Below, one piece after another: positions 12,866 through 64,000 of a stretch of 64,000 nt of DNA. The DNA is taken from the NCBI RefSeq assembly GCF_044704955.1, contig NC_091999.1, positions 57,040,001 through 57,104,000 of the forward strand, given 5' to 3'. The stretch comes from Pristiophorus japonicus (Eukaryota). The number at the start of each line of letters is the position of its first letter. Positions within the stretch are counted from its first letter, which is position 1. The notes under the pieces were generated by a model that saw only the letters and a program-made list of their open reading frames with translations, was not told the DNA's origin and searched no databases. The translations under genes were made by a program, and so were the position numbers.

Positions 12866-13143
12866 NNNNNNNNNNNNNNNNNNNNNNNNNNNNNNNNNNN
12901 NNNNNNNNNNNNNNNNNNNNNNNNNNNNNNNNNNNNNNNNNNNNNNNNNNNNNNNNNNNNNNNNNNNNNNNNNNNNNNNNNNNNNNNNNNNNNNNNNNNN
13001 NNNNNNNNNNNNNNNNNNNNNNNNNNNNNNNNNNNNNNNNNNNNNNNNNNNNNNNNNNNNNNNNNNNNNNNNNNNNNNNNNNNNNNNNNNNNNNNNNNNN
13101 NNNNNNNNNNNNNNNNNNNNNNNNNNNNNNNNNNNNNNNNNNN
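12866..13143. other. Assembly gap (N run), probably a (CA)n tract
   Basis: Ns. The paralogous position in the second copy (~26150-26275) is a CA-rich microsatellite between the same flanks. Confidence 0.85.
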
Positions 13144-25826: not shown

Positions 25827-27419
25827 AAGGAGTACATCAGTGTTTTCTGGGTGATGATGAGGTGATTACAAGACGATAAAGCGCAGAGACTGGCGTCTGC
25901 ATGCTCATTATCCTAGGTGTGATTTAATCCCGTTTCACACTGAATACTGCTGACAGAAATGGTCACCTGGTAACAGAATGGTCAGATTGACATTATTTTC
26001 TAAACAAGATCAAGCAAGAGAATGGGTTATCAATACATTTTAAAGCTATTAACCGACCTGTGATTGCATTTTGAATAAAGTAAAATGCTGGAAAATATTG
26101 GCTGAAGCTAATCATTTATCTTTGTGGAATGCACTTGCACACATTATGAATGTCTGCAATTGTTTTGTACACACTCACATACATCACACACACACACGCA
26201 CACACACACACACACACACATTCATAAACACACAAACGTACATATACACAAACACACATACACATATACCAAACACTTTTTGTGTTCTCTTTTCAGTTGT
26301 TCATTTCACTAGGTGAGAATTTTTTTCCGGTGAATATTAGGACCCTGCGGCCGCCCATCCGGCGGTGCTCTGAGGTCACGGTTCCAGGCTCTGTCTGACA
26401 CACTCAGTGGGTCACGTCACAGCTAAATAGAAAATACTGGATGAAAAACAATCGTTAATGTTAAAGAACTTGGAGAAATGGACACAGGAAAACACATTGT
26501 GATTTAGTAACCTCCAACACACGGATGTTGCCAGTAGTTCAAAGTGCACACCTTCCGTCCTGTCCCTCAATTCCAGTCCATCTCTGGGAGATTGTTACAA
26601 GGTTCACCCCATCCTCGCAACGCAAATATTACCGTCATAATACCAGATCAATTAGAGATTGCACACACGTGTTGATAGCTGTTAACAAATCTAAACATAT
26701 ACTTCCAAACAAAAAAGTATTGCATCCTCACACCTACACATATACACATCTTTATTTATATTAATATCTATCGATCTCTCTTCATATCGTCTGCTTATGT
26801 AACAGACGCATGTGCAAGTGCAGTAATAACTGAGGCAGGTTCTATGGTATAAGAAATAGAGACAGGATCCAGCGCACTAATAGTTTAGACAAGATCCAAA
26901 GTAACATGAAGAGAGACAGGAATTTATTATAATATATTTCAGCCATGGTCTATGGCAGGAATAACTGAGACAGTGCCTAGTATAATATAAACAGAGCCAT
27001 GGTCCAGTGTAATATAAATAAGGAACGAGTCTAGTGTAATATACACTGAGATAGGGACGAGTGTAATATAAATAGAGACAGGGCCTAGTGTAACATAAAC
27101 AGAGACAGGGGCTTGTGTAATATAAACCATGACTGGGTCTAGTGTAATATAAACAGAGACTGGGTAGAGTGTAATATAAACAGAGACAGGTTCTGGTGCA
27201 ATATAAACAGGGGCAGGTTCTAATGTAATATAAATAGAGACAAGGTCTAGTATAATATAAATAGAGATAGGGACGTGTGTTAATTAAACAGAGACAGGGT
27301 CCAGTGTAATATAAACAGAGACTGGGTCTAGTGCAGTAATAACTGTGACAGGGTCCAGGGTATCGATAACCAAGAGAGGGACTGCTGGGAGGATGAGTAA
27401 ACTGACCACAACACGGAGT

Positions 27420-30850: not shown

Positions 30851-32354
30851 AGATGGCGACAGGATCTAGCATGAAATAAACAGTGACAACTTCTAGTGTA
30901 ATATAAACAGAGACAGGCGTTGTGTAATATAAACATAGGCAGGGTCTAGTGTAAGATAAACAGGGAAATGGGCTCGTGTAATATATAGCAAAAGACAGGG
31001 TCTAGTGCAGTAATAACTAAGACAGGGCCCTACTTTATATAAACAGAAATACCGTTGAATGTAATGTAAAAAGAAACATGGTTTAGCAGAATGGTAACTT
31101 AGACAGGGCCTAGAGGCCTTTAAAAAGAGACAGGTTCTAATTTAACATAAACAGAGACAGATTTGAGTGTAATATAAAAAGGGACATGGTCTAGTGTACT
31201 GTAAACAGGGACAGGGCCTAATGTAACATAAACAGAGACAGGGTGTAATGTAATATAAGCAGAGGCAGCGTCTAGTGTAAAATAAACGGAGGCAGGTTCG
31301 AGTTTAATACAAACAGAGGCAGGGTCTAATGTGACATAAACCGAGAGAGGATCTAGTGTAATATAAACAGAGATATGTTCTCGTGTAATATAAATACGGA
31401 CAGTATCTAGTGCATTATAAACAGAGACGTGGTCTAGTGTAATATAAACAGAGACAGAAAGTCTAGTGTAATATAACCAGAAACAGGGTCGAGTGTATTA
31501 TAAACAGAGACATGGTCTAGTGTAATAAAAACTGAGACAGGGTCGAGTGTAATATATACAGAGACAGGTTGTAGTATAATGGAAACTGAGACAGCATCTC
31601 TTGTAATATAAACAGAGACGTGGTCTAGTGTAATATAAACAGAGACATGATATAGTGCAATATAAACAGTAACATGATCTAGCGTAGTATAAACAGAGAC
31701 AGGGTCTAGTGTAATATAAACAGAGGCAGGATGTAGAGTAATATAAACAGTGACATGGTCGAGCATAGTATAAACAGAGACAGGATCTAGTTTAATATAA
31801 ACGAGACAGGGTCTAGTGTAATATAAACAGAGACAGGATCTAGTGTAATTTAACAGAGATCGGTTCTAGTAGAATAGAAACAGAAAGATCTTGTGTAATT
31901 TTTAAAAAACGGGCCTAGTACAGTCAATACTAAGAGAGGGCCCAATGTAATATAAACAGAGACACTGTTGAATGTAATATAAAGAGAAACATTGTTTAGC
32001 AGAAAGGTAACTGCGTCCGTGCCTACAGCCCTGAAATCAGAGAAAGGTTCTGTGTAATGTAAACAGAGACTGGACTAGTGCAGTAATAACTGAGACAGGG
32101 TTTAATATAATAAAAAGAGAAACAGGCTCTGATCTAATATAAACAAAGACAGAGTCTAGTGCAGAAATAACTGTGACAGGGTCTAATATAATATCAACGG
32201 AGTCAGGGCCCTGTGCAGTAATAAATGAGACAGGTCTTAATAAAATCAAAACAAAGACAGTGCCTAGTACAATATAACCTGAGGCATGGTCTTGGGCAGT
32301 AATAGCTGTGTCCTCCGGATAATAGCCCTCCTGCAAGTGTAAACATTGTCATAG

Positions 32355-33755: not shown

Positions 33756-34619
33756 ATCGCACAGGATCTCGTGTATTATAAACAGAGATAGGGTCTAGGG
33801 TAATTTAAACAGTGAAAATGTCTAGTGTAATATAAAAAGAAACAGGATCCAGTGCAATATAAATCGAGACAGGATCCAGTGCAATATAAACACAGACAGG
33901 ATCTGGTGTAAAATAAACAGAGACAGGGTCTCGTGTAATATATAAAGAGACATGGTCCAGTCTAATATAACAGATACAGGGTCTAGTATAATGTAAACAG
34001 AGACAGGCTCTACTGTAATATATAAAGAGACATGGACTAGGGTAATATAAACAGAGACAGGGCCTGGTGTAAAAGAAACAGAGGTAGGGTCTCATGCAAT
34101 GTATACAGAGGCATGGTATATAAACAGAGTTAGGCTCTGGTATATTATATACACAGACAGGATCCAGTGTAGCATGAGCAGAGACAGGGTCTAGTGTAAA
34201 GTAAACAGAGACAGGGTCGAGGGTAATGTAGACAGACACAGGGTCTAATGAAATATAAACAGAGATAGGGTCTCGTGTAATATAAACAGAGACATGATCT
34301 GGTGTAATATAAACAGAGACGGGGTCTAATTATAATATAAACAGAGGCAGGGTCTGGTGTAATATAAACAGAGACAGGGTCTGGTGTAATATAAACAGAG
34401 ACAGGGTCTAGTGTCATTATTACAGCGAGAGCATCTAGCGTAATATAAACAGAGACAGGGTTTGGTGTAATATAAACAGAGACAGGGTCTGGTGCAATAT
34501 AAACAGAGACAGGGTCTAGTGTAACATAAACAGCGAGAGGGTCTAGCGTAATATAAACAGAGACAGGGCCTAGTGTAATATAAAGAGCGACAGGGTCCAG
34601 TGTAATATAAACAGAGACA

Positions 34620-36820
34620 TGGTGTAGTGGAGTAAAAACTGAGAAACAATCTGCCGTGATTTCATAGTGTCACAGACAATTATAGCTTAAAGGAAGCTAT
34701 TCGGTCCATCGTGCCTCTGCTGACCCTGAGTGAAAACCAATTCTGCACTTCTCGGCTCCTGATCTTATGCCAATGCTATAAAATCTAGGACCTCTGCTTA
34801 GTGGGAGCCGATATAATATATCATAGAATCTTAGAAATTGACAGCATGGAAGGAGGCCATTTCAGCTCATTATATAGCGCCAGCCAACCAAGAGCTATCC
34901 TGCCGTGTTCAGTAGCCTGTAGGTTACGACACGTTAACTGAACATTCAAGAATCTTTTATATATGGTGAGATTTCCTGCCTCTACCAATATTTCATATAG
35001 TGCGTTTCAGACTCCACCACCCTCTCGGTGAAGACATGTCCCCTCATATCTCCTCTACATTAGAAAACTAGTTATCATGTTGAAGACATCTATTAGGTCG
35101 CTAGTTAAACTTCTCTGTTACAAGGAGAACAGTTCTAACTTTTGAACTCTCTAATTGAAGTCCCTCATCGCTGGTAACAACCGGTTAAACCTCTTCAGTA
35201 CCCTTTTTAGTGTCTGTACATCGTTATGGAAATGTGGTGCTCAAAACTGTCCATAATATTCCATCTGAGGTCTAAGGCCTAATATAAGCAGAGATAAGTT
35301 GCAATGAATTAATAACTGAGACAGCGTCTAGAGTGATTTAAATAGAGACTGGGCCTAGTGCAAGATATAGAGAGACAGGCTCTAGTGTAACATAAAAAGA
35401 GACAGGTTCTAGTGTGAAATAAATAGATATATGGGCGAGTGTAACATAACCAACGAAAGGGTCTAGTGTAATATAAACAGAGACAGGGTCGTGTAATATA
35501 AACTGAGACAGGTTCTAGGGTAATATAAACTGAGACAGGGTCTAGTGTAATATAAACAGAGACAGGGTCTGGTGTAATATAAACAGTGACAGGGTCTGGT
35601 GCAATATAAACAGAGACAGGGTCTAGTGTAACATAAACAGCGAGAGGGTCTAGCGTAATATAAAGAGAGACAGGGTCTAGCGTAATATAAACAGAGACAG
35701 GGTCTAGTATAATATAAACAGAGACATGGTGTAGTTGAGTAAAAGCTGAGAAACAATCTGCTTTGATTTTATAGTGTCACAGACAATTACAGCTTAAAGG
35801 AAGCTATTCGGTCCATCGTGCCTCTGCTGACCCTGAGTGAAAACCAATTCTGCTTTTCTCCGCTCCTGATCTTATGCCAATGCTTTTAAATCTAGGACCT
35901 CTGCTTAGTGGGAGCCGATATAATATATCATAGAATCTTAGAAATTGACAGCGTGGAAGGAGGCCATTTCAGCTCATTGTATAGTGCCAGTCGACCAAGA
36001 GCTATCTTGCCAAATCCCACTTTCCAGCTCGTGTTCAGTAGCCTGCAGGTTACGACACATTAACTGAACATTCAAGAATCTTTTATATATGGTGAGAATT
36101 CCTGCCTCTACCAATATTTCATATCGTGCTTTTCACCACCCTCTCGGTGAAGACATGCCCCATCATATTGCCTCTACATTAGAAAACTAGTTATCATGTT
36201 GAAGACATCTATTAGGTCGCTAGATAAACTTCTCTTTTACAGGAGAACAGCTCTAACTTTTGAACTCTCTAATTGAAGTCCCTCATCGCTGGTAACAACC
36301 AGTTAAACCTCTTCAGTACCCTTTTTAATGTCTGTACATCGTTATGGAAATGTGGTGCACAAAATTGCCCATAATATTCCATCTGAGATGTAAGGCCTAA
36401 TATAAGCATAGATAAGTTGCAATGAATTATAACTGAGCCAGCGTCTAGAGTGATTTAAATAGAGACTGGGCCGAGTGCAAGATAAACAGAGACATGGCCT
36501 TGTCTAACATAAAAAGAAACAGGTTCTAGTGTAATATAAAGAGATATATGGGCGAGTGTAACTTAACCAGCGAAAGGGTCTAGTGTAATATAAACAGAGA
36601 CAGGGTCGTGTAATATAAACTGAGACAGGTTCTAGGGTAATATAAACAGAGACAGGGTCTAGTGTAATATAAACAGAGACAGGGTCTGGTGAAATATAAA
36701 CAGAGACAGGGTCTAGTGTAACATAAACAGCGAGAGGTTCTAGCGTAATATAAACAGAGACAGGGTCTAGTGTAATATAAACAGAGACATGGTGTAGTGG
36801 AGTAGAAACTGAGACAGAGT
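34620..36820 (+). repeat. Tandem duplication of a ~1.1-kb unit (unique/LINE remnant plus 27-bp satellite)
   Basis: CTGAGAAACAATCTGC...GTCACAGACAATTA...GGAAGCTATTCGGTCCATCGTGCC appears at ~34640 and ~35746 with near-identical downstream sequence. Confidence 0.9.
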
Positions 36821-37394
36821 CTCGTGAAATATTAACGGAGAAAGGGTCTCGTGTAATATAAACAGAAACAGGGCCTGGTGTACTATAAACAGAGACAATA
36901 TCTAGTGTAATATAAAGAGAGATGGGGTCCAAGTTAATATAAACAGAGACAGGGTCTCGAGTAATGTAAACAGGGATAGGATCTAGTGTAATCTCAGCAG
37001 GGACAGGATCTAGTGCAGTAATACATATTAAATCTCTGGCTTGTGGTTAATGTACGTCCTACCAGTGGAAAAGATTTCTAACTATTTACTCGATTAAAGC
37101 TCCTCATAATTTTGATCACCCCTATTAAATCACCCTAAACATTCTCGGATCTAAGGAGCACCGTCCCAGTTTCCTGCTGCTCGACTGATGCACCTCACGG
37201 ACATCCAGATGCGAAGTCGCTAAGATTTGATATGGAAATCACATTTTACAAGTGCCGGAATATCATCCCAGGCAAGATAAGAGCATTATCCCCGGGAAAT
37301 AAACCGACTGTGCAGGACTAGTCTCAGGCACTGAACTTTGGACACTCGGAACTAAATTACAACATCTAACAAATAAAGCTGTGGTGTGCTAAAG

Positions 37395-37845: not shown

Positions 37846-40394
37846 TCTAAATGTCAACATTTAAATACACTTTGCAATGGGTTACTCCTCTGGTTGCAGT
37901 TTTTACTTGTTTAGTTTACATGGCTGGAATCTTATGCTAAATGGACATCCAGTGAATTACTGATCTGTTCAGAGAAGTTCCACTGACTTTGGGAGCAGAA
38001 TATTCAGAATTGAATTTTTAATTTTAATATTTTCTCTTTGATATAAATCACATCTCTTCTAATTGAACAAACCAAAAACCGATGTCACTGCTGGAGATAT
38101 TTCCATTTCTTCATACCAACTGTCAATATTCATAAAATAAACCCGTGCTGTGTGTTAAACTAATCAGTTAATGACTTTGTGGATCTGGTCTTGCTGCCAT
38201 GAACACGTCATGGAAACCAGTGAGGTGTTTATGTAAATAAACACATAAATAGAAGTCCCAGATTAGAATAGTGAATGATAGAAACACAATAAATGTTTCC
38301 TCATCAATACAGAATAGAAATAAACAGAGAGAGAAATGCTAATGTCTCAACGGATTCCAGCAACAATTGATGTTTCGGAGATTTCTTTCAGTTATTGGTG
38401 AACAAATTAACGATGATATCCACGGTCAGAATGGGGAAAGATTCTAGTCACCGTATATAGTGACAGCTCAAATGCATTAGTGGCAATTCCCTGTTTCCCC
38501 TCCCTCTCTGCTTCTCTCTGCTATCCCCACCTTCTGCCTTGCCTCTAAAGAATGCGTCATTATCTTTACCTCACAATACGAAGTCAATGTCTATCACAAA
38601 TGTTCCCTAAGGTCTATTTCCAGGCCTCAAACCAAATTGGTGGGTGTGCGGAGAGGCAGCATTATAATAAAATATATTGTGTGAACTCAATGATTTGGGG
38701 GTGTTTGATGGGACTCTGTAGCGAGACCTTTACTCTGCATCTAACCATTGATGTACCTGCCCTGGGTGTGTTTGATCAGATGGGGTAGAGGGAGCTTTAC
38801 TCTGTAGCTAACTTGTGCTGTACCATCCCTGGGAGTGCTTGATGGGACAATGTGGAGGGAGCTTTACTCTGCATAGACCAGTGCTGTACCTGCCCTGGGA
38901 GAGTTTGATGGGTCGGTGCAGAACAACCTTTACTCTCTATCTAAACCGTGCTGTACGTGTACTGGGAGTGTCTGATGGGACGATGTAGAGGGAGCTTTAC
39001 TGTTTCTCGACTCATGCTGTAACTGCGCTGGGAGTGTTTGCTGGGACAACATCGAGGGAGCTTTACTCTGCATAGACCCGCGCTGTACGTGCCCTGGGAA
39101 TGTTTGATGGCACAGTGTGACATCACTATCCCAGAAAAATGTTATTATCAGTGCACCTTCCTGAAACTTGCATTTCGTTTTTGCCTGTTTGACATGTTCA
39201 CGTCAGCAACACGTAAACAAAGGGTGACATCATTGTTCACAACAATGCAGCGTCATCAACGTGAATTGGTCGCCATAGCTACATCAGTGCGACCTATGAC
39301 CCTCAGCCACTCGGATTGTTCAATTTGAACTATGTAGACACATCTATACCCCAAGCTGCAGTGTCGTAATAACCGAGACAGGTCCAATTGTAACATAGAC
39401 AGAGAGAGCATATAGTGTAATATATACAGTGGCAGGGTCTAGTGTAAAATAAGCAGACACAGCGTCTAGTGTAATATGAACAGAGGCAGCGTCTAGTGTA
39501 ATATAAACAGATACAGGGTCTCGTGAAATATGAAAAGAGACAGGGTCTTGTGTAATATAAACAGATACAGGGTCCAGTGTAACATGAATAATACAGAGTC
39601 TAGTTTAACATAAACAGAGGCAGTGTCGAGTTTATTAAAAAAAATACAGGTTCTAGTATAATATAAACTGAGACAGGGTCTAGTGAATAAAAATAGAGAC
39701 AGGGGCTAGTGTAATATAAACAGAGACAGGGTCTAGTATAATATAAACAGAGGCAGGGCCTATCTATTATAAAGAGACAGGGGCGAGAATAATATAAACT
39801 GTGTCAGGGTTCAACATAACATAATAAAGGATATCTTGCTGTAATAATAACTAATACATGATCTATTGTATTATAAACGTTGACATTTTCTATTGCAATG
39901 TAAACTGAGACAGAGTCCAGTGTAATATAAACAGCACAAGGACTAGTGAAATATTGACAGAAATAGGGTGTATGGTAATATAAACAGAGGCAGCGTCTAG
40001 TTCAGTAGTAACTGTGACAGAATCTAATGTATTATAACGGACGGTCAGGTACTGTGATAACTGATACAGAGCCTTGCATAATATGAACAGGGACAGGATC
40101 TAGTGCAGTGTAACTGAGACAGGATCTACAGTAATAAAATAGATCCCGAGACTAGTGCAGTAATAACTGAGACAGGGCCTTGTGCAATCTGAATAGAGAG
40201 ATGGTCCACAGCAGTTATAATTAAACAGAGTCTAGGGTAATTTAACCACGCAGAATGTCTAGAATAATTTGATAGCAACATTCCAACCTTGCAAATCTTC
40301 ATGTCTTTCTGACTGTCTATCCGTCTGTCTATCTGTCGTTTGGTCGGTCGGACTGTCCGTCTGTCCATCCGTCATTCGATTCGTACTTCTATCC

Positions 40395-42505
40395 ATCTAT
40401 CTGTACTTCTATCTAATATTGCACTAGACCCTGTTCCTGTTTATATTACATTATAACCAGTCACTGTTTATATTACACAAGATCCTGTCTCTGTTTATAT
40501 TACACTAGACCCTGTCCCTGTTTATATTACCCTAGACCCTGTCCCTGTTTATATTACCCTAGACTCTGTCCCTGATTATATTACGCTACACCCTGTCTCT
40601 GCTTATATTACACTAGACGCTGCCTCTGTTAATATTGTACTAAACCCTGCCCCAGTTTATATTACACTAGACCCTGTCTCTCTTTTCAATTACACTAGAT
40701 ACTGTATCTGTTTATAATTATCTAGACACGATCCCTGTTTATATTACACTAGACCATGTCTCTATTTAAATTACAGTAGAATTTGTCCCTCTGTATATTA
40801 TACTAGACCCTGTATAGAAACATAGAAACATAGAAAATAGGTGCAGGAGAAGGCCATTCGGCCCTTCTAGCCTGCAACGCCATTCAATGAGTTCATGGCT
40901 GAACATGCAACTTCAGTACCCCATTCCTGCTTTCTCACCATACCCCTTGATTCCCCTAGTAGTAAGGACTTCATCTCACTCCTTTTTGAATATATTTAGT
41001 GAATTGGCCTCAACAACTTTCTCTGGTAGAAAATTCCACAGGTTCACCACTCTCTGGGTGAAGAAATTCCTCCTCATCTCGGTCCTAAATGGCTTCCCCC
41101 TTATCCTTAGACTGTGTCCCCTGGTTCTGGACTTCCCCAACATTGGGAACATTCTTCCTGCATCTAACCTGTCTAACCCCGTCAGAATTTTAAACGTTTC
41201 TTTGAGGTCCCCTCTCATTCTTCTGAACTCCAGTGAATACAAGGCCAGTTGATCCAATCTTTCTTGATAGGTCAGTCCCGCCATCCCGGGAATCAGTCTG
41301 GTGAACCTTCGCTGCACTCCCTCAATAGTAAGAATGTCCTTCCTCAGGTTAGGAGACCAAAACTGTACACAATACTCCAGGTGTGGCCTCACCAAGGCCC
41401 TGTACAATTGTAGCAACACGTCCCTGCTCTTGTACTCAAATCCCCTCGCTATGAAGGCCAACATGCCATTTGCTTTCTTAACCGCCTGCTGTACCTGCAT
41501 GCCAACCTTCAATGACTGATGTACCATGACACCCAGGTCTCTTTGCACCTCCCCTTTTCCTAATCTGTCACCATTCATATAATAGTCTGTCTCTCTGTTT
41601 TTACCACCAAAGTGGATAACCTCACATTTATCCACATTATTCTTCATCTGCCATGCATGTGCCCACTCACCTAACCTATCCAAGTCGCTCTGCAGCCTCA
41701 TAGAATCCTCCGTGCAGCTCACACTGCCACCCAACTTAGTGTCATCCGCAAATTTGGATTTACTACATTTAATCCCATCGTCTAAATCATTAATGTACAG
41801 TGTAAACAGCTGGGGCCCCAGCACAGAACCTTGCGGTACCCCACTAGTCACTGCCTGCCATTCTGAAAGGTCCCCATTTACTCCTACTCTTTGCTTCCTG
41901 TCTGACAACCAGTTCTCAATCCATGTCAGCACACTACCCCCAATCCCATGTGCTTTAACTTTGCACATTAATCTCTTGTGTGGGACCTTGTCGAAAGCCT
42001 TCTGTAAGTCCAAATATACCACATCAACTGGTTCTCCCTTGTCCACTCTACTGGAAACATCCTCAAAAAATTCCAGAAGATTTGTCAAGCATGATTTCCC
42101 TTTCGCAACTCCATGCTGACTTGGACCTATCATATTACCTCTTTCCAAATGCACTGCTATGACATCCTTAATAATCGATTCCATCATTTTACCCACTACC
42201 GATGTCAGGCTGACCGGTCTGTAATTCCCTGTTTTCTCTCTCCCTCCTTTTTTAAAAAGTGGGGTTACATTGGCTACCCTCCACTCCATAGGAACTGATC
42301 CAGATTCAATGGAATGTTGGAAAATGACTGTCAATGCATCCACTATTTCCAAGGCGACGTCCTTAAGTACTGACCCTGTCTCTTTTTACATTAAACTGAA
42401 TGCTGTCTCTGTTTTTTTACACTCGGCCCAGTCTCTGTTTATATTACGCCAGGCACTGTCTCTGTTTATATTATCCTCGACACTGTCTCTCTTTTTATTA
42501 CACAG
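40395..42505 (-). repeat. 27-bp minisatellite in inverted orientation, split by a CR1 insertion
   Basis: TATTACACTAGACCCTGTCTCTGTTTA units (reverse complement of the upstream arrays) at 40395-40813 and 42372-42505. Confidence 0.88.
40814..42371 (-). mobile_element. Young 5'-truncated CR1 (RT domain)
   Basis: 458-aa RT ORF at 40976-42352. Tail ATAGAAACATAGAAAC at 40814. GACCCTGT flanks at 40806-40813 and 42372-42379 (possible TSD). Confidence 0.93.
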
Positions 42506-44745: not shown

Positions 44746-44998
44746 NNNNNNNNNNNNNNNNNNNNNNNNNNNNNNNNNNNNNNNNNNNNNNNNNNNNNNN
44801 NNNNNNNNNNNNNNNNNNNNNNNNNNNNNNNNNNNNNNNNNNNNNNNNNNNNNNNNNNNNNNNNNNNNNNNNNNNNNNNNNNNNNNNNNNNNNNNNNNNN
44901 NNNNNNNNNNNNNNNNNNNNNNNNNNNNNNNNNNNNNNNNNNNNNNNNNNNNNNNNNNNNNNNNNNNNNNNNNNNNNNNNNNNNNNNNNNNNNNNNNN
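44746..44998. other. Assembly gap (N run)
   Basis: Ns. Confidence 0.99.
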
Positions 44999-46407: not shown

Positions 46408-49312
46408 TCAGTACCCCATTCCTGCTTTCTCGCCATACCCCTTGATCCCCCTAGTAGTAAGGACCTCATCTATCTCCTTTTTGAATATATTTAGGGAATT
46501 GGCCTCAACAACTTTCTATGGTAGAGAATTCCACAGGTTCACCACTCTCTGGGTGAAGAAGTTCCTCCGCATCTCGGTCCTAAATGGCTTACCCCTTATC
46601 CTTAGACTGTGACCTCTGGTTATGGACTTCCCCAACATTGGGAACATTCTTCCTGCATCTAACCTGTCTAACCCCGTCAGAATTTTAAATGTTTGTATGA
46701 GGTCCCCTCTCATTCTTCTGAACTCCAGTGAATACAAGCCCAGTTGATCCAGTCTTTCTTGATAGGTCAGTCCCGCCATCCTGGGAATCAGTCTGGTGAA
46801 CCGTCGCTGCACTCCCTCAATAGCAAGAATGTCCTTTCTCAGGTTAGGAGACCAAAACTGTACACAATACTCCAGGTGTGGCCTCACCAATGCCCTGTAC
46901 AACTGTAGCAACACATCCCTGCCCCTGTACTCAAATCCCCTTGCTATGAAGGCCAACATGCCATTTGCTTTCTTAACCGCCTGCTGCACCTGCATGCCAA
47001 CCTTCAATGACTGATGTACCATGACACCCAGGTCTTTTTGCACCTCCCCTTTTCCTAATCTGTCACCATTCAGATAATAGTCTGTCTCTCTGTTTTTACC
47101 ACCAAAGTGGATAACCTCACATTTATCCACATTATACTTCATGTGCCATGCATTTGCCCACTCACCTAACATATCCAAGTCGCTCTCCAGCCTCACAGCA
47201 TCCTCCTCGCAGCTCACACTGCCACCCAACTCAGTGTCATCCGCAAATTTGGAGATACTACATTTAATCCCCTCATCTAAATCATTAATGTACAGTGTAA
47301 ACAGCTGGGGCCCCAGCACAGAACCTTGCGTTACCCCACTAGTCACTGCCTGCCATTCTGAAAAGTACCCATTTACTCCGACTCTTTGTTTCCTGTCTGA
47401 CAACCAGTTCTCAATCCATGTCAGTACACTACCCCCAATCCCATGTGCTCTAACTTTGCGCATCAATCTCTTGTGTGGGACCTTGTCGAACGCCTTCTGA
47501 AAGTCCAAATATACCACATCAACTGGTTCTCCCTTATCCACTCTACTGGAAACATCCTCAAAAAATTCCAGAAGATTTGTCAAGCATGATTTCCCTTTCA
47601 CAAATCCATGCTGACTTGGACCTATCATGTCACCTCTTTCCAAATGCACTGCTGTGACATCCTTAATAATTGATTCCATCATTTTACCCACTACCGATGT
47701 CAGACTGACCGGTCTATAATTCCTTTTTTCTCTCTCCTTCCTTTTTTAAAAAGTGGGGTTACATTGGCTACCCTCCACTCCATAGGAACTGATCCAGAGT
47801 CAATGGAATGTTAGAAAATGACTGTCAACGCATCCACTATTTCCAAGGCCACCTCCTTAAGTACTCTGGGATGCAGTCCATCAGGCCCTGGGGATTTATC
47901 GGCCTTCCATCCCATCAATTTCCCCAACACAATTTCCCGGCTAATAAGGATTTCCCCCAGATCCTCCTCCTTACTAGACTCCCCGACCCCTTTTTTAACC
48001 GGAAGGTTGTTCGTGTCCTCCTTCGTGAATACCGAACCAAAGTACTTGTTCAATTGGTCCGCCATTTCTTTGTTCCCCGTTATGACTTCCCCTGATTCTG
48101 ACTGTAGGGGACCTACGTTTGTCTTTATGAACCTTTTTCTCTTTACATATCTATAGAATCTTTTGCAATCCGTCGTAATGTTCCCTGCAAGCTTCTTCTC
48201 ATACTCCATTTTCCCTGCCCTAATCAAACCCTTTGTCCTCCTCTGCTGAGTTCTAAATTTCTCCCAGTCCCCAGATTCGCTGCTATTATTGGCCAATTTG
48301 TATGCCACTTCCTTGGCTTTAATACTATCCCTGATTTCCCTTGATAGCCACGGTTGAGCCACCTTCCCTTTTTTATTTTTATGCCAGACATGAATGTACA
48401 ATTGTTGTAGTTCATCCATGCGGTCTCTAAATGTCTGCCATTGCCCATCCACAGTCAACCCCTTAAGTATCATTCGCCAATCCATCCCAGCCAATTCACG
48501 CCTCATAACTTCAAAGTTAGCCTTCTTTAAGTTCTGGACCATGGTCTCTGAATTAACTGTTTTATTCTCAATACCAATGCAGAATTCCACCATATTATGG
48601 TCACTCTTCCCCAAGGGGCCTCGCACAACGAGATTGCTAATTAACCCTCTCTCATTACATAACACCCAGTCTAATATGGCCTCCCCCCTAATTGGTTCCT
48701 CGACATATTGGTCTAAAAAACCATCCCTTATGCACTCCAGAAAATCCTTCTCCACCGTATTGCTTCCAGTTTGGTTAGCCCAATCTATGTGCATATTAAA
48801 GTCACCCATTATAACTGCTGCACCTTTATTGCACGCACCCCTAATTTCATGTTTGATGCCTCCCCAACATCACTACTACTGTTTGGAGGTCTGTACACAA
48901 CTCCCACTAACGTTTTTTGCCCTTTAGTGTTCTGCAGCTCTACCCATATAGATTCCACATCATCCAAGCTAATGTCCTTCCTACCTATTGCCTTAATCTC
49001 CTCCTTAACCAGCAATGCTACCCCACCTCCTTTTTCTTTTATTCTATCCTTCCTGAATGTTGAATACCCCTGGATGTTGAGTTCCCAGCCCTGATCATCC
49101 TGGAGCCACGTCTCCGTAATCCCAATCACATCATATTTTTTAACATCTATTTGCACAGTTAATTCATCCACCTTATTGCGGATACTCCTTGCATTAAGAC
49201 ACAAAGCCTTTAGGCTTGTTTTTTTAACACCCTCTGTCCTTTTAGAATTTTGCTGTACAATGGCCCTTTTTGTTCTTTGCCTTGGGTTTCTCTGCCCTCC
49301 ACTTTTCCTCAT
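46408..49312 (-). pseudogene. CR1 ORF2 (APE-RT) with premature stops and frameshifts
   Basis: Split into ORFs 48809-49312, 47811-48809 and 46516-47691. In-frame stops at 47811 and 46516. Confidence 0.9.
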
Positions 49313-49389
49313 CTCCTTTCTGTCATATGTTTTTGCCTCCTTTTTGTTTCCCTCTATTTCCCTGCATTGGTTCCCATCCCCCTGCCATA

Positions 49390-50337
49390 TTAGTTGAACT
49401 CCTCCCCAACAGCACTAGCAAACACTCCCCCGAGGACATTGGTTCCGGTCCTGCCCAGGTGCAGACCGTCCGGTTTGTACTGGTCCCACCTCCCCCAGAA
49501 CCGGTTCCAATGCCCCAGGAATTTGAATCCCTCCCTGCTGCACCATTGCTCAAGCCACGTATTCATCTGAGCTCTCCTGCGATTCCTACTCTGACTAGCA
49601 CGTGGCACTGGTAGCAATCCCGAGATTACTACTTTTGAGGTCCTACTTTTTAATTTAGCTCCTAGCTTCTTAAGTTCATTTCGTAGGAACTCATCCCTTT
49701 TTTTACCTATGTCTTTGGTACCAACGTGCACCACGACAACTGGCTGTTCTCCCTCCCTTTTTAGAATGTCCTGCACCCGCTCCGAGACATCCTTGACCCT
49801 TTCACCAGGGAGGCAACATACCATCCTGGAGTCTCGGTTGCGACCGCAGAAACGCCTATCTATTCCCCTTACAATTGAATCCCCTATCACTATCGCTCGC
49901 CCACTCTTTTTCCTGCCCTCCTGTGCAACAGAGCCAGCCACGGTGCCATGAACTTGGCTGCTGCTGCCCGCTCCTGATGAGTCATCCCCCTCAACAGCAC
50001 TCAAAGCAGTGTATCTGTTTTGCAGTGGGATGACCACAGGGGACCCCTGCACTACCTTCCTTGCACTACTCTTCCTGCTGGTCTTCCATTCCCTCGCTGG
50101 CTGTGGACCCTTCTCCTGCGGTAAGACCAACTCGCTACACGTGATACTCACGTCGTTCTCAGCATCGTGGATGCTCCAGAGTGAATCCACCTTCAGCTCC
50201 AACTCCGCAACGCGGACCGTCAGTAGCCGGAGGTGGACACACTTTCCGCACATGTAGTCGTCAGGGACACTGGTTTTGTCCCCGTGTTCCCACATGGTAC
50301 AGGAGGAGCATATCACGTGACCGAGCTGTCCTGCCAT
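49390..50337 (-). CDS. CR1 ORF1p: N-terminal Cys zinc-finger/coiled coil plus SGNH/GDSL-type esterase domain
   Basis: 315-aa ORF with CSSC...CGKC, heptad LRLLTVRVAELELKVDSL, GDSIVRG, HVGTKDI and DGLHL. Confidence 0.88.
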   Translation of the reverse strand: MAGQLGHVICSSCTMWEHGDKTSVPDDYMCGKCVHLRLLTVRVAELELKVDSLWSIHDAENDVSITCSELVLPQEKGPQPAREWKTSRKSSARKVVQGSPVVIPLQNRYTALSAVEGDDSSGAGSSSQVHGTVAGSVAQEGRKKSGRAIVIGDSIVRGIDRRFCGRNRDSRMVCCLPGERVKDVSERVQDILKREGEQPVVVVHVGTKDIGKKRDEFLRNELKKLGAKLKSRTSKVVISGLLPVPRASQSRNRRRAQMNTWLEQWCSREGFKFLGHWNRFWGRWDQYKPDGLHLGRTGTNVLGGVFASAVGEEFN

Positions 50338-50697: not shown

Positions 50698-50904
50698 CCA
50701 TCTTTTATACCCATCTCCCGCACTCGGTTACATAGAGTGATAACAATTCAGATTATAGGGGATACTTTATTGGTACAGATGCATGGATATATAGCAGGAT
50801 ATGGAGAAACACAAACTGGCCGTGTCTTTAGAACCTGATAATGTATTTCAATCTCAGAGATTCACGACCCTGTGAAGCAGTGAGGAAATAAATTGATTTT
50901 ATTT

Positions 50905-51030
50905 ACAGTCCAGATGTGAGTCCATTCTGTTGGTGATGTGGAAGGAGTGACGTGGACCCAGAATCCGCCTCTATCAGGGAATCAACGGGCGGCGCCTGTA
51001 ACCTCGCCCCCACCTCCCGGGTATTTAACT
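50905..51030 (+). promoter_or_regulatory. VH promoter: E-box, CRE/TCR-decamer-like elements, TATA-like box, no octamer
   Basis: CAGATG 50911-50916, GGTGATGTGG ~50932-50941, AGTGACGTGG 50946-50955, TATTTAA 51022-51028 (about 95 bp before the ATG). No ATGCAAAT/ATTTGCAT seen, consistent with known elasmobranch VH promoters. Confidence 0.65.
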
Positions 51031-51120
51031 GCCGGTCACTGGGACCGCAATACAACAGTCTGGGAGTGCGTTTGCCCAGTGAGTTCTTGCCGAAATCATT
51101 CACCACACATTGCCAGGAGG

Positions 51121-51166
51121 ATGAGGTCGGCTATTTCTCTCAGTCTGTTGCTGGCTTTCTTTTCCC
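51121..51166 (+). CDS. IGHV: IgM VH leader exon
   Basis: ATG...MRSAISLSLLLAFFS, then a phase-1 donor C|GTGAGT. Typical shark IgM VH signal peptide. The 125-bp intron ends TTTCTACAG at 51291. Confidence 0.95.
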
Positions 51167-51291
51167 GTGAGTAGTTTTTATTGTCCAAGTCTTTCATTGT
51201 TCCTGTCTCAGTGTTAGTCTCTCTGGAATGTTACAGAATTAGGAATCGTTTCACCAGGATTGATCCTCGGGGTTTCTGATTATTTCTACAG

Positions 51292-51596
51292 GTGTCCAGT
51301 CGGATATGGTGTTGACTCAGCCCGAGGCAGAGACCAGGATTCCCGGGGGCTCCCTGAGACTGACCTGTCAAACCAGCGGCTTAGATCTTGGTGGCAGCTA
51401 CATGTACTGGGTCCGCCACGTTCCCGGACAGGGGCTGGAGTGGCTGATTAGATATTACAGTTCATCGGACAAGCATTACACCCCGGGGACTGAGGGCCGA
51501 TTTACTGTGTCCAAAGATACTTCAAGCAACATCTTCGCGTTGGACATGAAGAAACTGCGGAGCGAAGACACCGCCATCTATTACTGTGCAAGGCAC
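51292..51596 (+). CDS. IGHV: Unrearranged IgM VH segment (end of leader + V domain)
   Basis: (R)[101 protein letters not shown]. Canonical Cys, Trp and YYC, no stops. Confidence 0.97.
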
Positions 51597-51635
51597 CACA
51601 GCGAGAGGAACCAGGGCTGGACCCGTACAAGAACA
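51597..51635 (+). promoter_or_regulatory. V recombination signal sequence, 23-bp spacer
   Basis: Heptamer CACAGCG (51597-51603), 23-nt spacer, nonamer ACAAGAACA (51627-51635). Confidence 0.93.
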
Positions 51636-52040
51636 GATCGAGGGGGAATTCAATAACGTCCATCATAACCTGACGGTCAGTAATTGTGTCAAATGCAATG
51701 ATAACGGCATTGTTCAAAACCAGACCACAAACCGCTTCTTACAAAACTAAGACACTGATAATTCAATGGTGAAAATATAACACTGTAACCAATGTACTGA
51801 GGGAGGTTTCGGTTGTGCTCCTGCTTAATGTTAACAGTGTCAACAATTGCCCAGCTGGACATGATGCTCGATTCACTGTGCCTGATACCTGCAGGGAGCT
51901 GGTGAGAACTGTGTTCTCCTTCTATTTGTTCTACAAACTGTTGGCTAAATTCTAAACTTGATAAGAAGCGAATTTGTATTTGAAGTGCATGTGTATTTCG
52001 AATGAATGTTGAGAATCAGTACTGAGCAGAGACTGAATGC

Positions 52041-52068
52041 AATATTTGTACGGGTTCCTATCACTGTG
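52041..52068 (-). promoter_or_regulatory. Recombination signal sequence, 12-bp spacer (D1-type 5' RSS)
   Basis: Nonamer AATATTTGT (52041-52049), 12-nt spacer ACGGGTTCCTAT, heptamer CACTGTG (52062-52068). Confidence 0.88.
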
Positions 52069-52133
52069 GGACCACGGGAATAAGGACGCCATGGGCTACT
52101 GGGGACCAGGGACCATGGTGACGGTGATTGCAG
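52069..52133 (+). CDS. IGHJ: Joined D(D)-JH segment
   Basis: G-GAC CAC GGG AAT AAG GAC GCC ATG GGC TAC TGG GGA CCA GGG ACC ATG GTG ACG GTG ATT GCA G|GTAAG = DHGNKDAMGYWGPGTMVTVIA. WGxG motif, phase-1 donor, and 31 nt between the heptamer and the Trp codon. Confidence 0.88.
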
Positions 52134-55100
52134 GTAAGGAACATTCCTACATTCTGCAACTGTTGTATTTGTGCCTTTATTTTACATTTCTCTTTATTTT
52201 AATAATTATTTCGTTCACTGAAACTTGGGTTCGGTGGGTTCTCTATTGAGATTTTTCAATGTTTTATGTAATTCTGCTACAAAGTGATTATAGAATTCAA
52301 CTGTTTCTCCACATAAGTTGTTGTTGAAGTGATTTGGTGTTTATCTGCTAACGAGTTTCTGTGCTTGAGTTACGTTAAATCCTTTAAAGTTGTTACACTG
52401 TTTGACACTTCTGCAATGTTTAATCTCGGTGACCTATGATTGCTGCAATTTTTCTGATCGAATACAAACATTGTGTTTAAATATTTTTGAAAGAACATTT
52501 TAAACACATAACATAAATCTTAGCGCTCAATATATATTCTTAAGGAATTTAAAGATTTTAGTGAAAATTACATTTGTCATCTACTGACCGAATGTTCCCG
52601 AATGCACAGATTCAATACGTGAAGTGTTGCTGTAATTAAGGACTGAAAAATTAACACATTTCCAGATGGACCTGATTTAAATTAATATTACTAACATTAT
52701 AATGATGTAGTAATATCACCCGTTATTATTAAAATATGCTATAATATTAACATTAATGTATTTTACATGATCCATCAAATCACAATTCTGCTGTCATTAT
52801 TTTATATTTCAGTTGAAGTCAATCATAAGTTATTTTAGTTTTAGGCGGCTTCGGTGATTCTGTAAAGAGACTTTTTGCAATGATACATTTAATTCTGCTG
52901 AAATGGTTTAGAGAATGAAGGATCTGTTCATGAAAGGTTCTGTCCGCCCCTCAGTGATGTGATTTAGTATTGATCTGCTGAGGAGAGTTTGTGCCGGTGT
53001 TATTCAGAATACCAAAAATTTGTGAAACTATTTCGCGTTTCTACAATGTTTAATATCGGTGACAGCGGGCAGCAGCAGGTTCCTGATCGAATACAAACAA
53101 GATATGTGTTTGAAACTGTTTGAAAGCAGATTGTAGGCAGAGAACAGGAAGGTTTTAGGAATCAGAAATCATTGAAATATATTTTAACATAACAATTATT
53201 GGTGATAATTATATATTCATCTATAAATTTATGTTTACGATGCTGATATTTACTGAGTGAAACGTAACTGTAATTACCAGCTATATAATTAGCAATTATT
53301 CAGGTTGTAGCTGAAATAAATTACGATTAACAAACCGATTATAATATTATAATGCGATAATATCTTCCAATGTTATTAAAATATGTTATAATATCAATAT
53401 AATTTTCTTAATATTATTTGCCTTCCAAAATCCTGCTGTACACTGGGCTCCATTAAGAGGAGCAGAAACTTTTAGAGGCTGGATACAATTATTAATTATG
53501 CCTGCAATTAGTTCACTGACAACATATTGATTCCACCGTGTGTTCAGTTTGAGTCGGGAGTTCAGTTACTTTTTACCTCCTGTTTACAGAGATGATTGGC
53601 AGTGTCTTTAATTATAACTCAAAGCCGTGTTGTAAATTGCATTTTGTCAATTTAACATGAAATTCTTACTGTGCAACCGAAATTTGTTATTGAATCACTA
53701 TTGTGTTTTGTTTGATACCGATAGAATTATCACTAAACTAATCTTAAACAGTTTGCAAGATCAGCGGCTGTGAGTCAGGCGTCACCGGCAGTCAAATAAT
53801 TATTCATGTGATTATATTCAAATTCAAGACTGCATAGGCTGGAGATAGGCAAATAATCCATTGAAATTCAAGCAGATTAATTTACTTAAAAAATGTTCAT
53901 CTTGTTTAGAATTTAACACAACTTCCTTTCTCCCAAAGCGGTGCTATATAAGGGATAGAACGGTAGACATAGCACAGGTCATATCTGAGAATTATGTTAA
54001 TTATTATTAATATTAAATTGATGAACAAAGTCTCTCCTCCATTTTCTCATTCAGGTTCAGTGTGGCAGATGGCCTGAATGATTTGTTATCCTACAGTTTT
54101 ACACTAACCATTCTGGAAATTAGTTTCAAGAAATAGCAGAATGTATTTAATAATTAATTTGGGGGCATTGTGTGAATAATGGGAGTGAACTGTAAATGAT
54201 TGTCTGTGTTATTAAATAGCAGAAGTTCTGCTACTGACTGCAAACTGGTTTTAATTAAGAAAACCATTTTTGGGAAGTTAAGATTGTGGAGAATATTTCA
54301 GCTCGAGAGTCCAGTTTAGTAAACAAGTGGTTTACAGCACATCGGACTTGTGACCCGGGCCGGACAGTGAACTATTTAAAATAGTCCACTCCTCAATCCA
54401 TCATGTGCAATGTACTCTGAAAATAGACGCAGTTTTTGTTATGTCAGAATATGTAGAATTTAAAAATGTATCGGTAGAGAACGGGACAGAAGTAGAACTG
54501 CGTAATTAGCGTCAATTAGTCAAATGTGATTTGAGTTAAGTAAAAATAATTTATTTTTCTGATTGTATTTATGTATTAATATGCTGCTTAATATTTTACT
54601 GTTGATGAATTGTTATGGTAAGTTGAGTAAACCTTAATATATCACAAGTTGCCAGGCAGAAAAGGTTTTTAAATTATTATTCATTAATTGTATCAGTAAG
54701 ACTGAAATTCAAGCACATTAAGTTAATTTCAAAAGTTCCAGGTACGTGTGCTTCTGAGGAGGAAGTGCCAGACAGGTACTCAGAGTATTTCCAATAATCA
54801 GCTAACACGAACACAAACTTAAAATGTAATATTCGTTCTAATTCATTAAACATAAATGATCTCTTGCAATTGCATTGCATACTGGTCAACATTACAGTTA
54901 TTACACTAACACAAGGGTTGGAGAGAATGTTTAATTAATTCCTAAATTAATTTAGAAGATAATGCATGTATAACTCGGCTGTGCTGAGTTCGATAAGCTA
55001 TCGCTTAATATTTTAGTTGATTTTGCCTCGATGATTTTACAGGTTATATTTACTATTGCAAATATGTCAAATCAGTGGGTGATCAGGTTTCAATGTATAT

Positions 55101-59434: not shown

Positions 59435-59734
59435 TAACACCGTTTCCCCCCAATCTCTACGCCCTGCTCTCCTCCTGTGAACAACCCAGCACCGATGGCT
59501 CCATCACATACGGCTGTTTGGCGATGGACTACTCCCCCGATATCACCAGCCTTTCCTGGAAGAAAGATAAAGATCCTATCACCACTGCATTGAAGACCTA
59601 CCCGTCAGTGTTCAACAAGAAAGGAATCTACACCCAGAGCAGCCAGTTAACCATCACCAAGTCAGATGTGGGGAGCAGCACAATCTTCTGTGAGGTTCGA
59701 CGTGGTGTGTCGGTCTGGGCCATCACAATGCCAG
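59435..59734 (+). CDS. IGHM: IgM heavy chain Cmu1 exon
   Basis: Acceptor TTTCTCAG, then (V)[99 protein letters not shown], donor G|GTTAGT. Closely resembles shark Cmu1. Confidence 0.96.
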
Positions 59735-59811: not shown

Positions 59812-60258
59812 AACACCTAGAGTACTGTGTACAGTTCTGCTCTCCCTATCATACTTAGAATACTGTGTACAGTTCTCGTCTCCAAATCACACTTAGAGTA
59901 TTGTGTACAGTTATGATTTCCACATAATACTTAGAATACTGAGCACAGTTCTAGTTTCCTTATCACATTTAGAATATTGGTCACAATTCTGGTTTCCATC
60001 TCATACTTAGATTAGTGTCTAAAGTTCTGGTCTCCATATCATACTAAGAATATTATGCACAGTTCCGGTCTCCATATCACAGTTAGAATATTCTTTAAAG
60101 TTCTGGTTTCGATCTCATACTTAGAATACGGCATAAAGTTGTGGTCTCCATATCATGCTTAGAATACTGTGCATGGTTCTGGACCTCATATCGCACTTAG
60201 AATATTATGCACAGTTCTGGTCTGCATATTACACTGAGAATACAGTGCACAGTTCTGC
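59812..60258 (+). repeat. 38-bp minisatellite (about 12 copies) derived from CR1 ORF2
   Basis: Unit approx. CATACTTAGAATACTGTGTACAGTTCTGGTCTCCATAT, matching the HLEYCVQFWSP coding segment. Confidence 0.85.
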
Positions 60259-60380
60259 TCTCTGTAAATGCCTGGTTAGTGTTAGTCTGATAGCAAAGAA
60301 CCTGTTAAAATATAAGGACACTTTGCATTTCTTAATCATTTATTTTACAAGCAATGTCAGTAATATGTTTTTTTTTGAAG

Positions 60381-60698
60381 ATCCTGAACCGGACATCGGT
60401 CCTCCAACTGTTGTCCTCACGCTGAGTTCCACTGAACAAATCACCACCAGCAGATATGCAAGCGCCGTGTGTTCAATCATCGATTTCCGGCCAAAGTCAC
60501 TGACCGTGAATTGGCTGAAGAGTGGACAACTCCTGGATTCGGGTTTCGTCACCTCTCCCGTCTTTGAGGTGAACGGGAACTTCTCGACGGCCAGTCGGCT
60601 GACAGTCCCCGCCGAGGAATGGTTCACCGGCTCGGTCTACACCTGCCAAGTCACTCATGAAGGGGTCACGCAAAGCCGTAACTTCAGCAGATCTCAGG
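60381..60698 (+). CDS. IGHM: IgM heavy chain Cmu2 exon
   Basis: Acceptor TTTTTTGAAG, then (D)[105 protein letters not shown], donor G|GTAAGA. Confidence 0.96.
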
Positions 60699-62649: not shown

Positions 62650-62958
62650 TGGATGTCCCATGCAGTGATTCAAAAATCACTCTTCGCCCACCGTCACTGG
62701 AACAGGTCTTACTGGAGGCGACGGTGACCTTAACCTGCGTCGTGTCTGACGCTCCTTATGGGCTCACCGTGTCCTGGACCCGAGAAAAGGAGGCTTTGAA
62801 ATCAGAGATTGCCGTCCAACCGGGAGAGGATCCCAACAGCGTGATCAGCAACTTAAACATCTCGACACAAGACTGGCTGAGTGGGGATAAGTTCTACTGC
62901 GTTGTGAGCCATCAGGATATGCCGACTCCGATCAGAGATTCCATCCACAAGGAAAAGG
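62650..62958 (+). CDS. IGHM: IgM heavy chain Cmu3 exon
   Basis: Acceptor GTTTCGCAG, then (V)[102 protein letters not shown], donor G|GTGAGC. Confidence 0.96.
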
Positions 62959-63871: not shown

Positions 63872-64000
63872 CAAAAGATCGGCGGGAACCGGCCGTGTCT
63901 GTCCTCCTGCCCTCGGTAGAAGAAGTCTCCGCTCCGAGGTTGGTCAGCCTCACCTGCTTAGTGAGAGGTTTCTCCCCCCGAGAGATCTTTGTCAAATGGA
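63872..64000 (+). CDS. IGHM: IgM heavy chain Cmu4 exon (partial, runs off the window)
   Basis: Acceptor TGTTCTACAG, then (A)[42 protein letters not shown]. Not listed in the ORF track. Confidence 0.94.

What the first reader, a model, noticed from the sequence alone, without database searches (positions are those of the whole stretch)
51292..52133. IgM cluster with a free V and a pre-joined D(D)J: a heavy chain that would recombine in one step
Seen: V ends in a 23-RSS. After 405 bp there is one 12-RSS followed directly by 65 nt that run in frame into WGPGTMVTV and a splice donor. I see no separate D segments and no 22/23-RSS before J. The 31 nt before the J Trp codon are longer than a usual JH 5' part. 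Established: shark IgM clusters are V(23)-(12)D1-D2-(23)J with a few hundred bp between segments, and RAG-made germline-joined clusters exist (fully joined VDJ such as nurse shark IgM1gj, and VD-J forms). Inference: D1(-D2)-J were joined, keeping the D1 5' RSS at its normal position. This leaves a 12/23-compatible V-to-DJ step with a single junction and a mostly germline-fixed CDR3 (CAR..DHGNKDAMGYW). A flush join is out of frame by one base, so trimming or N addition is still needed. All visible exons are intact, so this may be a functional semi-invariant, innate-like or early-life antibody gene. Best candidate for a new system in this window.
Basis: partly seen in the sequence, partly recalled or inferred. 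Interest (0 to 1): 0.9.

Follow-up and report, generated by a model that had tools for sequence, protein, structure and literature searches.

The report
Shark IgM cluster, pre-joined DJ
A complete shark-type IgM heavy-chain gene cluster has its D and J pieces already fused in the animal's DNA while V is still separate, so one cut-and-paste step would finish the gene; this is a modest extension of the known germline joining of shark antibody genes, not a new system.

Summary
The V exon (51292-51596) ends in a 23-RSS. 405 bp later comes one 12-RSS (52041-52068), the only perfect-heptamer RSS in the 64 kb. It is followed by 65 coding nt that run in frame into WGPGTMVTVIA and a splice donor. Open Cmu1-3 exons and the start of Cmu4 lie downstream, and no free D is present.

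Independent short-read contigs from the sequenced animal span the RSS/DJ/donor stretch at the same depth as the flanks. The layout is therefore in essentially all of its cells. It is neither a lymphocyte rearrangement nor an assembly collapse.

A paralogous J contig matches only from 52086 on. Before that it has its own heptamer plus TT, so 52069-52085 (17 nt) are extra, D-derived sequence, and the 12-RSS here is not that J's own.

The best reading is a germline, RAG-type D(-D)-to-J coding join that keeps D's 5' 12-RSS. The reviews I read list VD-J/VDD-J, VD-DJ and VDJ as germline forms, and V-DDJ only as a somatic intermediate. I rate this a new variant of a known kind.

The scan has already noted the same layout at two other places in this genome. 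Expression was not seen. The D source was not aligned, because paralog DNA was out of reach.

The parts
51022..51028 (+). TATA-like TATTTAA about 95 nt upstream of the ATG. No ATGCAAAT octamer (at most 1 mismatch) lies within 600 nt upstream.
   Evidence: Paralog contig depth rises from about 50884, so the conserved cluster promoter region starts there.
51121..51166 (+). Leader exon (MRSAISLSLLLAFFS + 1 nt) with a GT donor at 51167
   Evidence: The 51166->51292 GT..AG splice is seen in an RNA-like contig of run X6.
51292..51596 (+). VH exon, open, with Cys/Trp/YYCAR landmarks; ends ...TGT GCA AGG CAC
   Evidence: Pfam V-set E 7.8e-16. 59-71% identity to shark IgM VH (Chiloscyllium, Heterodontus HV01, Scyliorhinus).
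51597..51635 (+). V 23-RSS: CACAGCG, 23-nt spacer, ACAAGAACA
   Evidence: The same CACAGCG heptamer is seen in paralog contigs (loose end at 51597).
51636..52040 (+). 405-nt V-to-DJ spacer with no D and no further RSS. It would be excised together with both RSSs as a 472-bp signal-joint circle (51597-52068).
   Evidence: Paralog contigs cover it at 3-6 times single-copy depth, so the spacer is shared with other clusters.
52041..52068 (+). 12-RSS in 5'-of-coding orientation: AATATTTGT, spacer ACGGGTTCCTAT, CACTGTG. Inferred to be the 5' RSS of the D.
   Evidence: unique in the window. Its spacer is unlike that in front of a paralogous J (CACAACGTGTCT).
52069..52085 (+). 17 nt GGACCACGGGAATAAGG with no counterpart in the paralogous J. 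Inferred D-derived, possibly with N/P nucleotides.
   Evidence: the paralog contig matches only from 52086 and reads ...CACTGTG TT just before. Open in the J frame; the +0 frame has a TAA.
52086..52133 (+). J-derived part (ACGCCATGGGCTAC TGG GGA CCA GGG ACC ATG GTG ACG GTG ATT GCA G) followed by a GTAAGG donor
59435..59734 (+). Cmu1 exon, phase 1, open
   Evidence: Pfam C1-set. An RNA-like paralog contig splices J to a near-identical exon start.
60381..60698 (+). Cmu2 exon, open
   Evidence: C1-set E 2.5e-17
62650..62958 (+). Cmu3 exon, open
   Evidence: C1-set. The best solved-structure matches are IgM mu chains, E about 1e-30.
63872..64000 (+). Start of Cmu4 exon ([14 protein letters not shown]...[10 protein letters not shown]), which runs off the window end

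Best explanation
This is an IgM heavy-chain minicluster of a shark (L-V, DJ, Cmu1-4). In it, the D segment, or D1 plus a remnant of D2, was joined to J by an RSS-directed (RAG-type) coding join in the germline of an ancestor.

That join deleted D's 3' RSS, the short D-J interval and J's own RSS. It kept D's 5' 12-RSS. What is left is V(23-RSS) - 405 nt - (12-RSS)DJ.

In a developing B cell a single 12/23 deletion (a 472-bp circle) would finish the V region. Diversity would arise at one junction only, and most of CDR3 (..HGNKDAMGYW) is fixed in the genome. A flush join is out of frame. A join through the 3-nt CAC homology (51594-96 with 52073-75) is in frame and gives CARHGNKDAMGYW.

Shown here: the anatomy, that the layout is in all cells of the animal, and that the extra 17 nt are not part of a paralogous J. 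Inferred: RAG as the agent, D as the source of the 17 nt, and any use of the gene.
For: - Exact RSS geometry, and the 12-RSS is unique in the window.
- All visible exons are open and in phase. The C exons are mu-like.
- Contigs built from the animal's own short reads span 51934-52222 with 0-1 differences. Their depth is 36 (X1) and 51 (X3), equal to the neighbouring single-copy contigs at 34-40 and 45-59.
- A paralogous contig matches only from 52086 onward. Just before that it reads AGTATTTGA-CACAACGTGTCT-CACTGTG-TT. So a normal J of this family starts 2 nt before 52086, and its RSS spacer and flank are unlike those here.
- Earlier notes on the same genome describe many V23-12D22-12J clusters 920-939 nt long, against 842 nt here. 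The 78-97 nt missing is about what a D-to-J coding join removes: a 38-nt 22-RSS, a short gap and a 28-nt 12-RSS (notes unverified).
- RAG-made germline joins are established in sharks (PMC2193156). V-DDJ occurs as a somatic intermediate in nurse shark (PMC2435157).
Against: - The D of an unjoined paralog could not be fetched, so the 17 nt are not aligned to any D, and N/P nucleotides cannot be assigned.
- Only one paralogous J contig was shown, and only 30 letters of its flank.
- All DNA runs that hold the stretch come from one sample, probably the assembled animal. Its tissue is unknown and no second individual was tested.
- No transcript from this cluster was seen in the two small RNA-like runs.
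- No octamer lies upstream.
- The end of Cmu4 and the TM exons lie outside the window.
Confidence: 0.72

Rival explanations
1. A cluster that simply lacks a free D. The 12-RSS would be J's own (the 12-RSS that many J segments of this genome carry, possibly from an older D2-J join), and the free D was lost by an ordinary deletion. The long 5' part would then be an old D2 remnant or native J sequence.
For: Earlier notes say that J segments with a 12-RSS are common in this genome. The nonamers are alike: AATATTTGT here and AGTATTTGA in the paralog.
Against: The paralog J starts 2 nt before 52086 and lacks the 17 nt. Its RSS spacer and 226-nt upstream flank do not match this locus at 85% identity. 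The 405-nt V-to-RSS distance equals the V-to-D distance implied by the one-D clusters. A deletion ending exactly at RSS borders would be a coincidence.
Confidence: 0.15
2. Artefact: a somatic D-J rearrangement from lymphocytes in the sequenced tissue, or a collapsed or chimeric assembly.
For: All runs that hold the stretch come from one sample of unknown tissue. The same DNA runs also hold low-depth V(D)J-joined contigs.
Against: The junction-spanning contigs are error-free and at the same depth as the flanking single-copy contigs in two data sets. A polyclonal somatic join would be a tiny fraction of reads. The same layout is noted at two other loci.
Confidence: 0.03
3. It is a real germline DJ join but a silent relic, like the partially joined horned-shark heavy-chain clusters whose expression was not detected.
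For: No contig from the RNA-like runs X5/X6 carries 52069-52084 or a V at least 99% like this one. There is no octamer. [quoted passage not shown]
Against: All exons, splice sites and both RSSs are intact. The D part is open in the J frame. The RNA-like runs are small (137-165 million letters) and of unknown tissue and age.
Confidence: 0.45

Closest known systems
Partially germline-joined IgM clusters of horned shark and little skate (VDD-J / VD-J, VD1-D2J) and fully joined VDJ clusters (Kokubu et al. 1988, as summarised in PMC2193153, PMC5192425, PMC4279169)
   Same: The same minicluster type. The join lies exactly at RSS borders, the remaining RSSs are intact, the layout is inherited, and it is ascribed to RAG activity in germ cells.
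   Different: In every listed form V has been joined to D. Here V is free and the join is on the D-J side only, leaving a 23/12 pair rather than a 22/12 or 12/23 pair further downstream.
V-DDJ and V-D-DJ somatic intermediates in nurse shark lymphocytes and thymocytes (PMC2435157)
   Same: An identical product: V with a 23-RSS, then a 12-RSS in front of fused D(D)J. This shows that RAG readily makes this form.
   Different: Those forms are somatic and found in a minority of cells. Here the form is at single-copy depth in the animal's DNA.
Nurse shark IgM1gj and germline-joined light chains (PMC2193156, PMC4279169)
   Same: Germline-fixed CDR3 sequence. These are the precedent for early-life use of pre-joined genes.
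   Different: They are fully joined and need no RAG. This cluster still needs one RAG step and keeps one diversifying junction. No expression data exist for it.
Mammalian pro-B DJH intermediate and one-step V-J light-chain loci (own knowledge)
   Same: A 5' 12-RSS on a DJ unit that then receives a V with a 23-RSS. It is a single-junction assembly, as in light chains.
   Different: The mammalian DJ is made anew in each cell. Here it is inherited.
Other clusters of the same genome noted by this scan: V-DJ (s1-877530, s1-878440), one-D V23-12D22-12J (s1-877846, s1-876492, s1-877203) and VD-DJ (s1-874769 and others)
   Same: The same gene family and the same kind of RSS-bordered germline change. 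Two loci share this exact layout.
   Different: Whether they share this junction (one old join, then duplication) or arose separately was not testable here.

Membership tests
Cartilaginous-fish IgM heavy-chain minicluster | Leader plus V exon encoding a VH-type V-set domain with conserved Cys, Trp and YYCAR | tested here: met
   59-71% identity to shark IgM VH.
Cartilaginous-fish IgM heavy-chain minicluster | V followed by a 23-spacer RSS | tested here: met
   CACAGCG-23-ACAAGAACA at 51597-51635
Cartilaginous-fish IgM heavy-chain minicluster | Two free D segments (12-D1-22, 12-D2-12) and a J with a 23-RSS | tested here: not met
   There is no free D, and the only RSS before J is a 12-RSS. This is the departure under study.
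Cartilaginous-fish IgM heavy-chain minicluster | J with a WGxG motif and a donor in phase with four mu-type C exons a few kb downstream | tested here: met
   WGPG plus a GTAAGG donor. Cmu1-3 are open and phase 1, and Cmu4 starts at 63872. The exons are mu-like by PDB sequence search. The end of Cmu4 and the TM exons lie outside the window.
Germline-joined (RAG-rearranged in germ cells) shark Ig gene | The join lies exactly where two RSSs would have been, and the outer RSSs are left intact | tested here: met
   A perfect heptamer abuts the coding DNA at 52068/52069, and no RSS remnant lies inside 52069-52133.
Germline-joined (RAG-rearranged in germ cells) shark Ig gene | Unjoined paralogs exist whose segments account for the joined sequence | tested here: inconclusive
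   The J part is accounted for by one paralog contig from 52086 on.
Germline-joined (RAG-rearranged in germ cells) shark Ig gene | Present in non-lymphoid or germ-cell DNA and in unrelated animals | tested here: inconclusive
   At single-copy depth in two data sets of one sample. The tissue is unknown and no second animal holds the words.
Germline-joined (RAG-rearranged in germ cells) shark Ig gene | Expressed, for example early in ontogeny | tested here: inconclusive
   No contig with 52069-52084 in the RNA-like runs X5/X6. These runs are small and of unknown tissue and age.

The most novel reading that the evidence does not exclude
V-DJ clusters (this one and the two others noted in this genome) are a maintained, expressed subclass of IgM genes. 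One RAG step, biased by the CAC/CAC microhomology, would yield a near-canonical CDR3 (CARHGNKDAMGYW). That would give the shark a semi-invariant, innate-like heavy chain, perhaps in early life, that sits between fully joined IgM1gj-type genes and fully split clusters.
Probability: 0.15. Interest if true: 0.6.

Novelty: new variant of a known kind. Interest (0 to 1): 0.35.

Why it matters
Sharks are the only vertebrates in which RAG has repeatedly rearranged antibody genes in the germline. The catalogue in the reviews I read (VD-J/VDD-J, VD-DJ, VDJ) always has V already joined. A V-free, DJ-joined cluster fills the missing class. It shows that germline joining can start at the J side, as somatic joining can. 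It also gives a natural heavy-chain locus that assembles in one step, like a light chain.

If it is expressed, it would be a heavy chain with one junction and a mostly inherited CDR3, which is relevant to how restricted early-life repertoires are encoded. If it is silent, it is one more by-product of germline RAG activity. Either way it is an extension of a known process, not a new principle.

Tried and rejected
- **Free D between V and DJ:** a relaxed RSS scan (heptamer at least 5/7 starting CAC, nonamer at least 5/9, spacers 11-13 and 22-24) found none. The only other hit (51833-51839, 5/7 heptamer, 13-nt spacer) has no partner RSS.
- **Second cluster in the window for comparison:** none. 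There is one J motif and one V-end motif.
- **Paralog DNA:** The VH protein search returned only other species at no more than 71% identity. The search of earlier findings by sequence was blank.
- **Sequencing runs:** only one sample holds the stretch.
- **Expression:** X5/X6 behave like RNA, but none of their contigs carries the D part.
- **Literature:** no paper in the library lists a germline V-DJ or V-DDJ shark IgM cluster. Kokubu 1988 is not held.
- **D core shared with a paralog:** a rearranged paralog transcript (GACTGCGGGAGT against GACCACGGGAAT here) matches 9 of 12 by hand count. This is only suggestive and was not used.
- **Somatic or assembly artefact:** rejected on depth parity.
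- **Octamer promoter motif:** not found within 600 nt upstream.

Full report
**Observation.**
- The leader exon (51121-51166) splices to a VH exon (51292-51596) that ends ...TAT TAC TGT GCA AGG CAC on a codon boundary.
- The V exon is followed by CACAGCG, a 23-nt spacer and ACAAGAACA (51597-51635).
- After 405 nt comes AATATTTGT, a 12-nt spacer and a perfect CACTGTG (52041-52068).
- The heptamer directly abuts 65 coding nt (52069-52133). Read from 52070, these give DHGNKDAMGYWGPGTMVTVIA and end at a GTAAGG donor.
- The donor is in phase with Cmu1 (59435-59734). Cmu2 (60381-60698), Cmu3 (62650-62958) and the start of Cmu4 (63872 to the window end) follow. All are open, with phase-1 borders.

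Domain and similarity searches agree with an IgM cluster.
- Pfam calls V-set for the V exon and C1-set for the three C exons.
- The best solved-structure matches of Cmu3 are IgM mu chains.
- The V exon is 59-71% identical to shark IgM VH regions.
- Exons were searched one by one by reference.

**Is it more than chance?** The window holds one J-like motif and one V-end motif, against 0.05 and 0.01 expected. Across all 64 kb and both strands, the 12-RSS at 52041-52068 is the only perfect heptamer with a 12- or 23-spaced nonamer of at least 6/9. A relaxed scan finds no D and no further RSS pair between V and DJ.

**Is it real DNA of the animal?** Four runs of one sample hold the stretch.
- Contigs built from those reads span 51934-52222 (X1, 0 differences, depth 36) and 51934-52211 (X3, 1 difference, depth 51).
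- The neighbouring single-copy contigs of the J-C intron have depths of 34-40 and 45-59.
- The RSS-DJ-donor stretch is therefore present at full single-copy depth.
- This excludes a polyclonal lymphocyte rearrangement and argues against assembly collapse.
- It is not independent of the assembled animal. The tissue is unknown and no second individual was informative.

**Is the long 5' part native J or a join?** The same lay-out shows a paralogous contig that matches this locus only from 52086 onward.
- Immediately before that it reads AGTATTTGA-CACAACGTGTCT-CACTGTG-TT.
- So a J of this family begins 2 nt before 52086, behind its own heptamer. A nonamer-like block sits at 12-nt spacing. A 23-spaced nonamer would lie outside the 30 letters shown.
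- That contig's spacer and its 226-nt upstream flank are unlike this locus.
- Hence 52069-52085 (GGACCACGGGAATAAGG, 17 nt) are extra, and the 12-RSS here is not that J's RSS.

Earlier notes of this scan add context, but I did not verify them.
- Many clusters of this genome are V23-12D22-12J, 920-939 nt from the start of V to the end of J, against 842 nt here.
- The missing 78-97 nt are about what a D-to-J coding join deletes: a 38-nt 22-RSS, a short gap and a 28-nt 12-RSS.
- The implied V-to-D distance of about 400 nt equals the 405 nt here.

One D-to-J join is therefore enough.

**Mechanism.** Shown: two intact RSSs that obey the 12/23 rule in deletional orientation, open exons, and a D part that is open in the J frame although the +0 frame has a TAA.

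Inferred: RAG in a germ-line cell of an ancestor made a D-J coding joint. Germline RAG joining is the accepted origin of joined shark Ig genes (PMC2193156, PMC2193153), and V-DDJ and V-D-DJ forms are made somatically in nurse shark (PMC2435157).

In a B-cell precursor, one V-to-DJ deletion would complete the gene by excising 51597-52068 as a 472-bp circle. A flush join is +1 out of frame. My own reading of the sequence is that the last V codon CAC (51594-96) and the CAC codon at 52073-75 offer a 3-nt homology. A join through it is in frame and gives CARHGNKDAMGYW. That is a testable prediction for N-poor repertoires.

**Use of the gene.** Runs X5 and X6 behave like RNA. They show the leader-V splice, V(D)J joints and J spliced to a Cmu1-like exon. 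Their contigs come from paralogs (about 90% identity in V), and none carries 52069-52084. These runs are small, so this is only a weak negative. No octamer lies within 600 nt upstream, though a TATTTAA sits at 51022. Joined and partially joined horned-shark H-chain genes were reported as not detectably expressed, whereas nurse-shark joined genes are expressed in pups (PMC2193156). Function is open.

**Comparison with what is known.** Three texts list the germline forms as VD-J/VDD-J, VD-DJ (VD1-D2J) and VDJ (PMC5192425, PMC4279169, PMC2193153). None lists a free V with joined D(D)J, and full-text searches found no such report. The library lacks many subscription papers, including Kokubu 1988. 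The form is the expected product of a known process, so I rate it a new variant of a known kind with modest interest.

The scan has found the same layout before on other DNA of this genome: s1-877530 and s1-878440, both followed up with the same verdict. I did not test those loci.

**Limits.**
- N runs (12866-13143, 44746-44998) were left untouched.

Noticed in passing
window 14987-17803 (+), 46516-50337 (-), 40976-42352 (-), 1553-5277 (-): Several copies of one LINE family. One copy has an intact 938-aa endonuclease/reverse-transcriptase ORF. The copy just upstream of the IgM cluster has an RVT_1 ORF and an ORF1 with a GDSL-esterase domain (CR1-like make-up).
   Followed up: partly
window 26963-27362, 30858-32208, 33761-34646, 35314-35735, 36431-37015, 39371-40001, 40416-40813: Long arrays of a 27-nt (54/81-nt) tandem repeat (AACAGAGACAGGGTCTAGTGTAATATA) are scattered over 14 kb upstream of the cluster. 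A 67-nt repeat occurs at 10066, 22804, 38696 and 55660, and a 38-nt array in the Cmu1-Cmu2 intron at 59818-60262.
   Followed up: no
window 51592-52109 (paralog contigs laid): The DNA runs of the sequenced sample hold low-depth contigs (5.6-8.9 against about 36 for single copy) in which a divergent V is joined through 26-37 letters to J. Several other contigs leave V at 51592 into AGACATTCGCTGGTACTC... These are either germline VD/VDJ-joined paralogs or lymphocyte rearrangements in the sampled tissue. The low depth is unexplained.
   Followed up: no
By distance from Cmu4 (starting at 63872) it could be the TM2 of this IgM cluster. A like note exists for an IgM cluster elsewhere (s1-876644), so it may be a family-wide feature or a misread splice site. 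It lies outside my window and was not checked.
   Followed up: no
window 50884-51120: Paralog contig depth jumps at about 50884, marking the start of the conserved cluster promoter region. No ATGCAAAT octamer (at most 1 mismatch) lies within 600 nt of the ATG; only a TATTTAA at 51022.
   Followed up: partly
   Followed up: no
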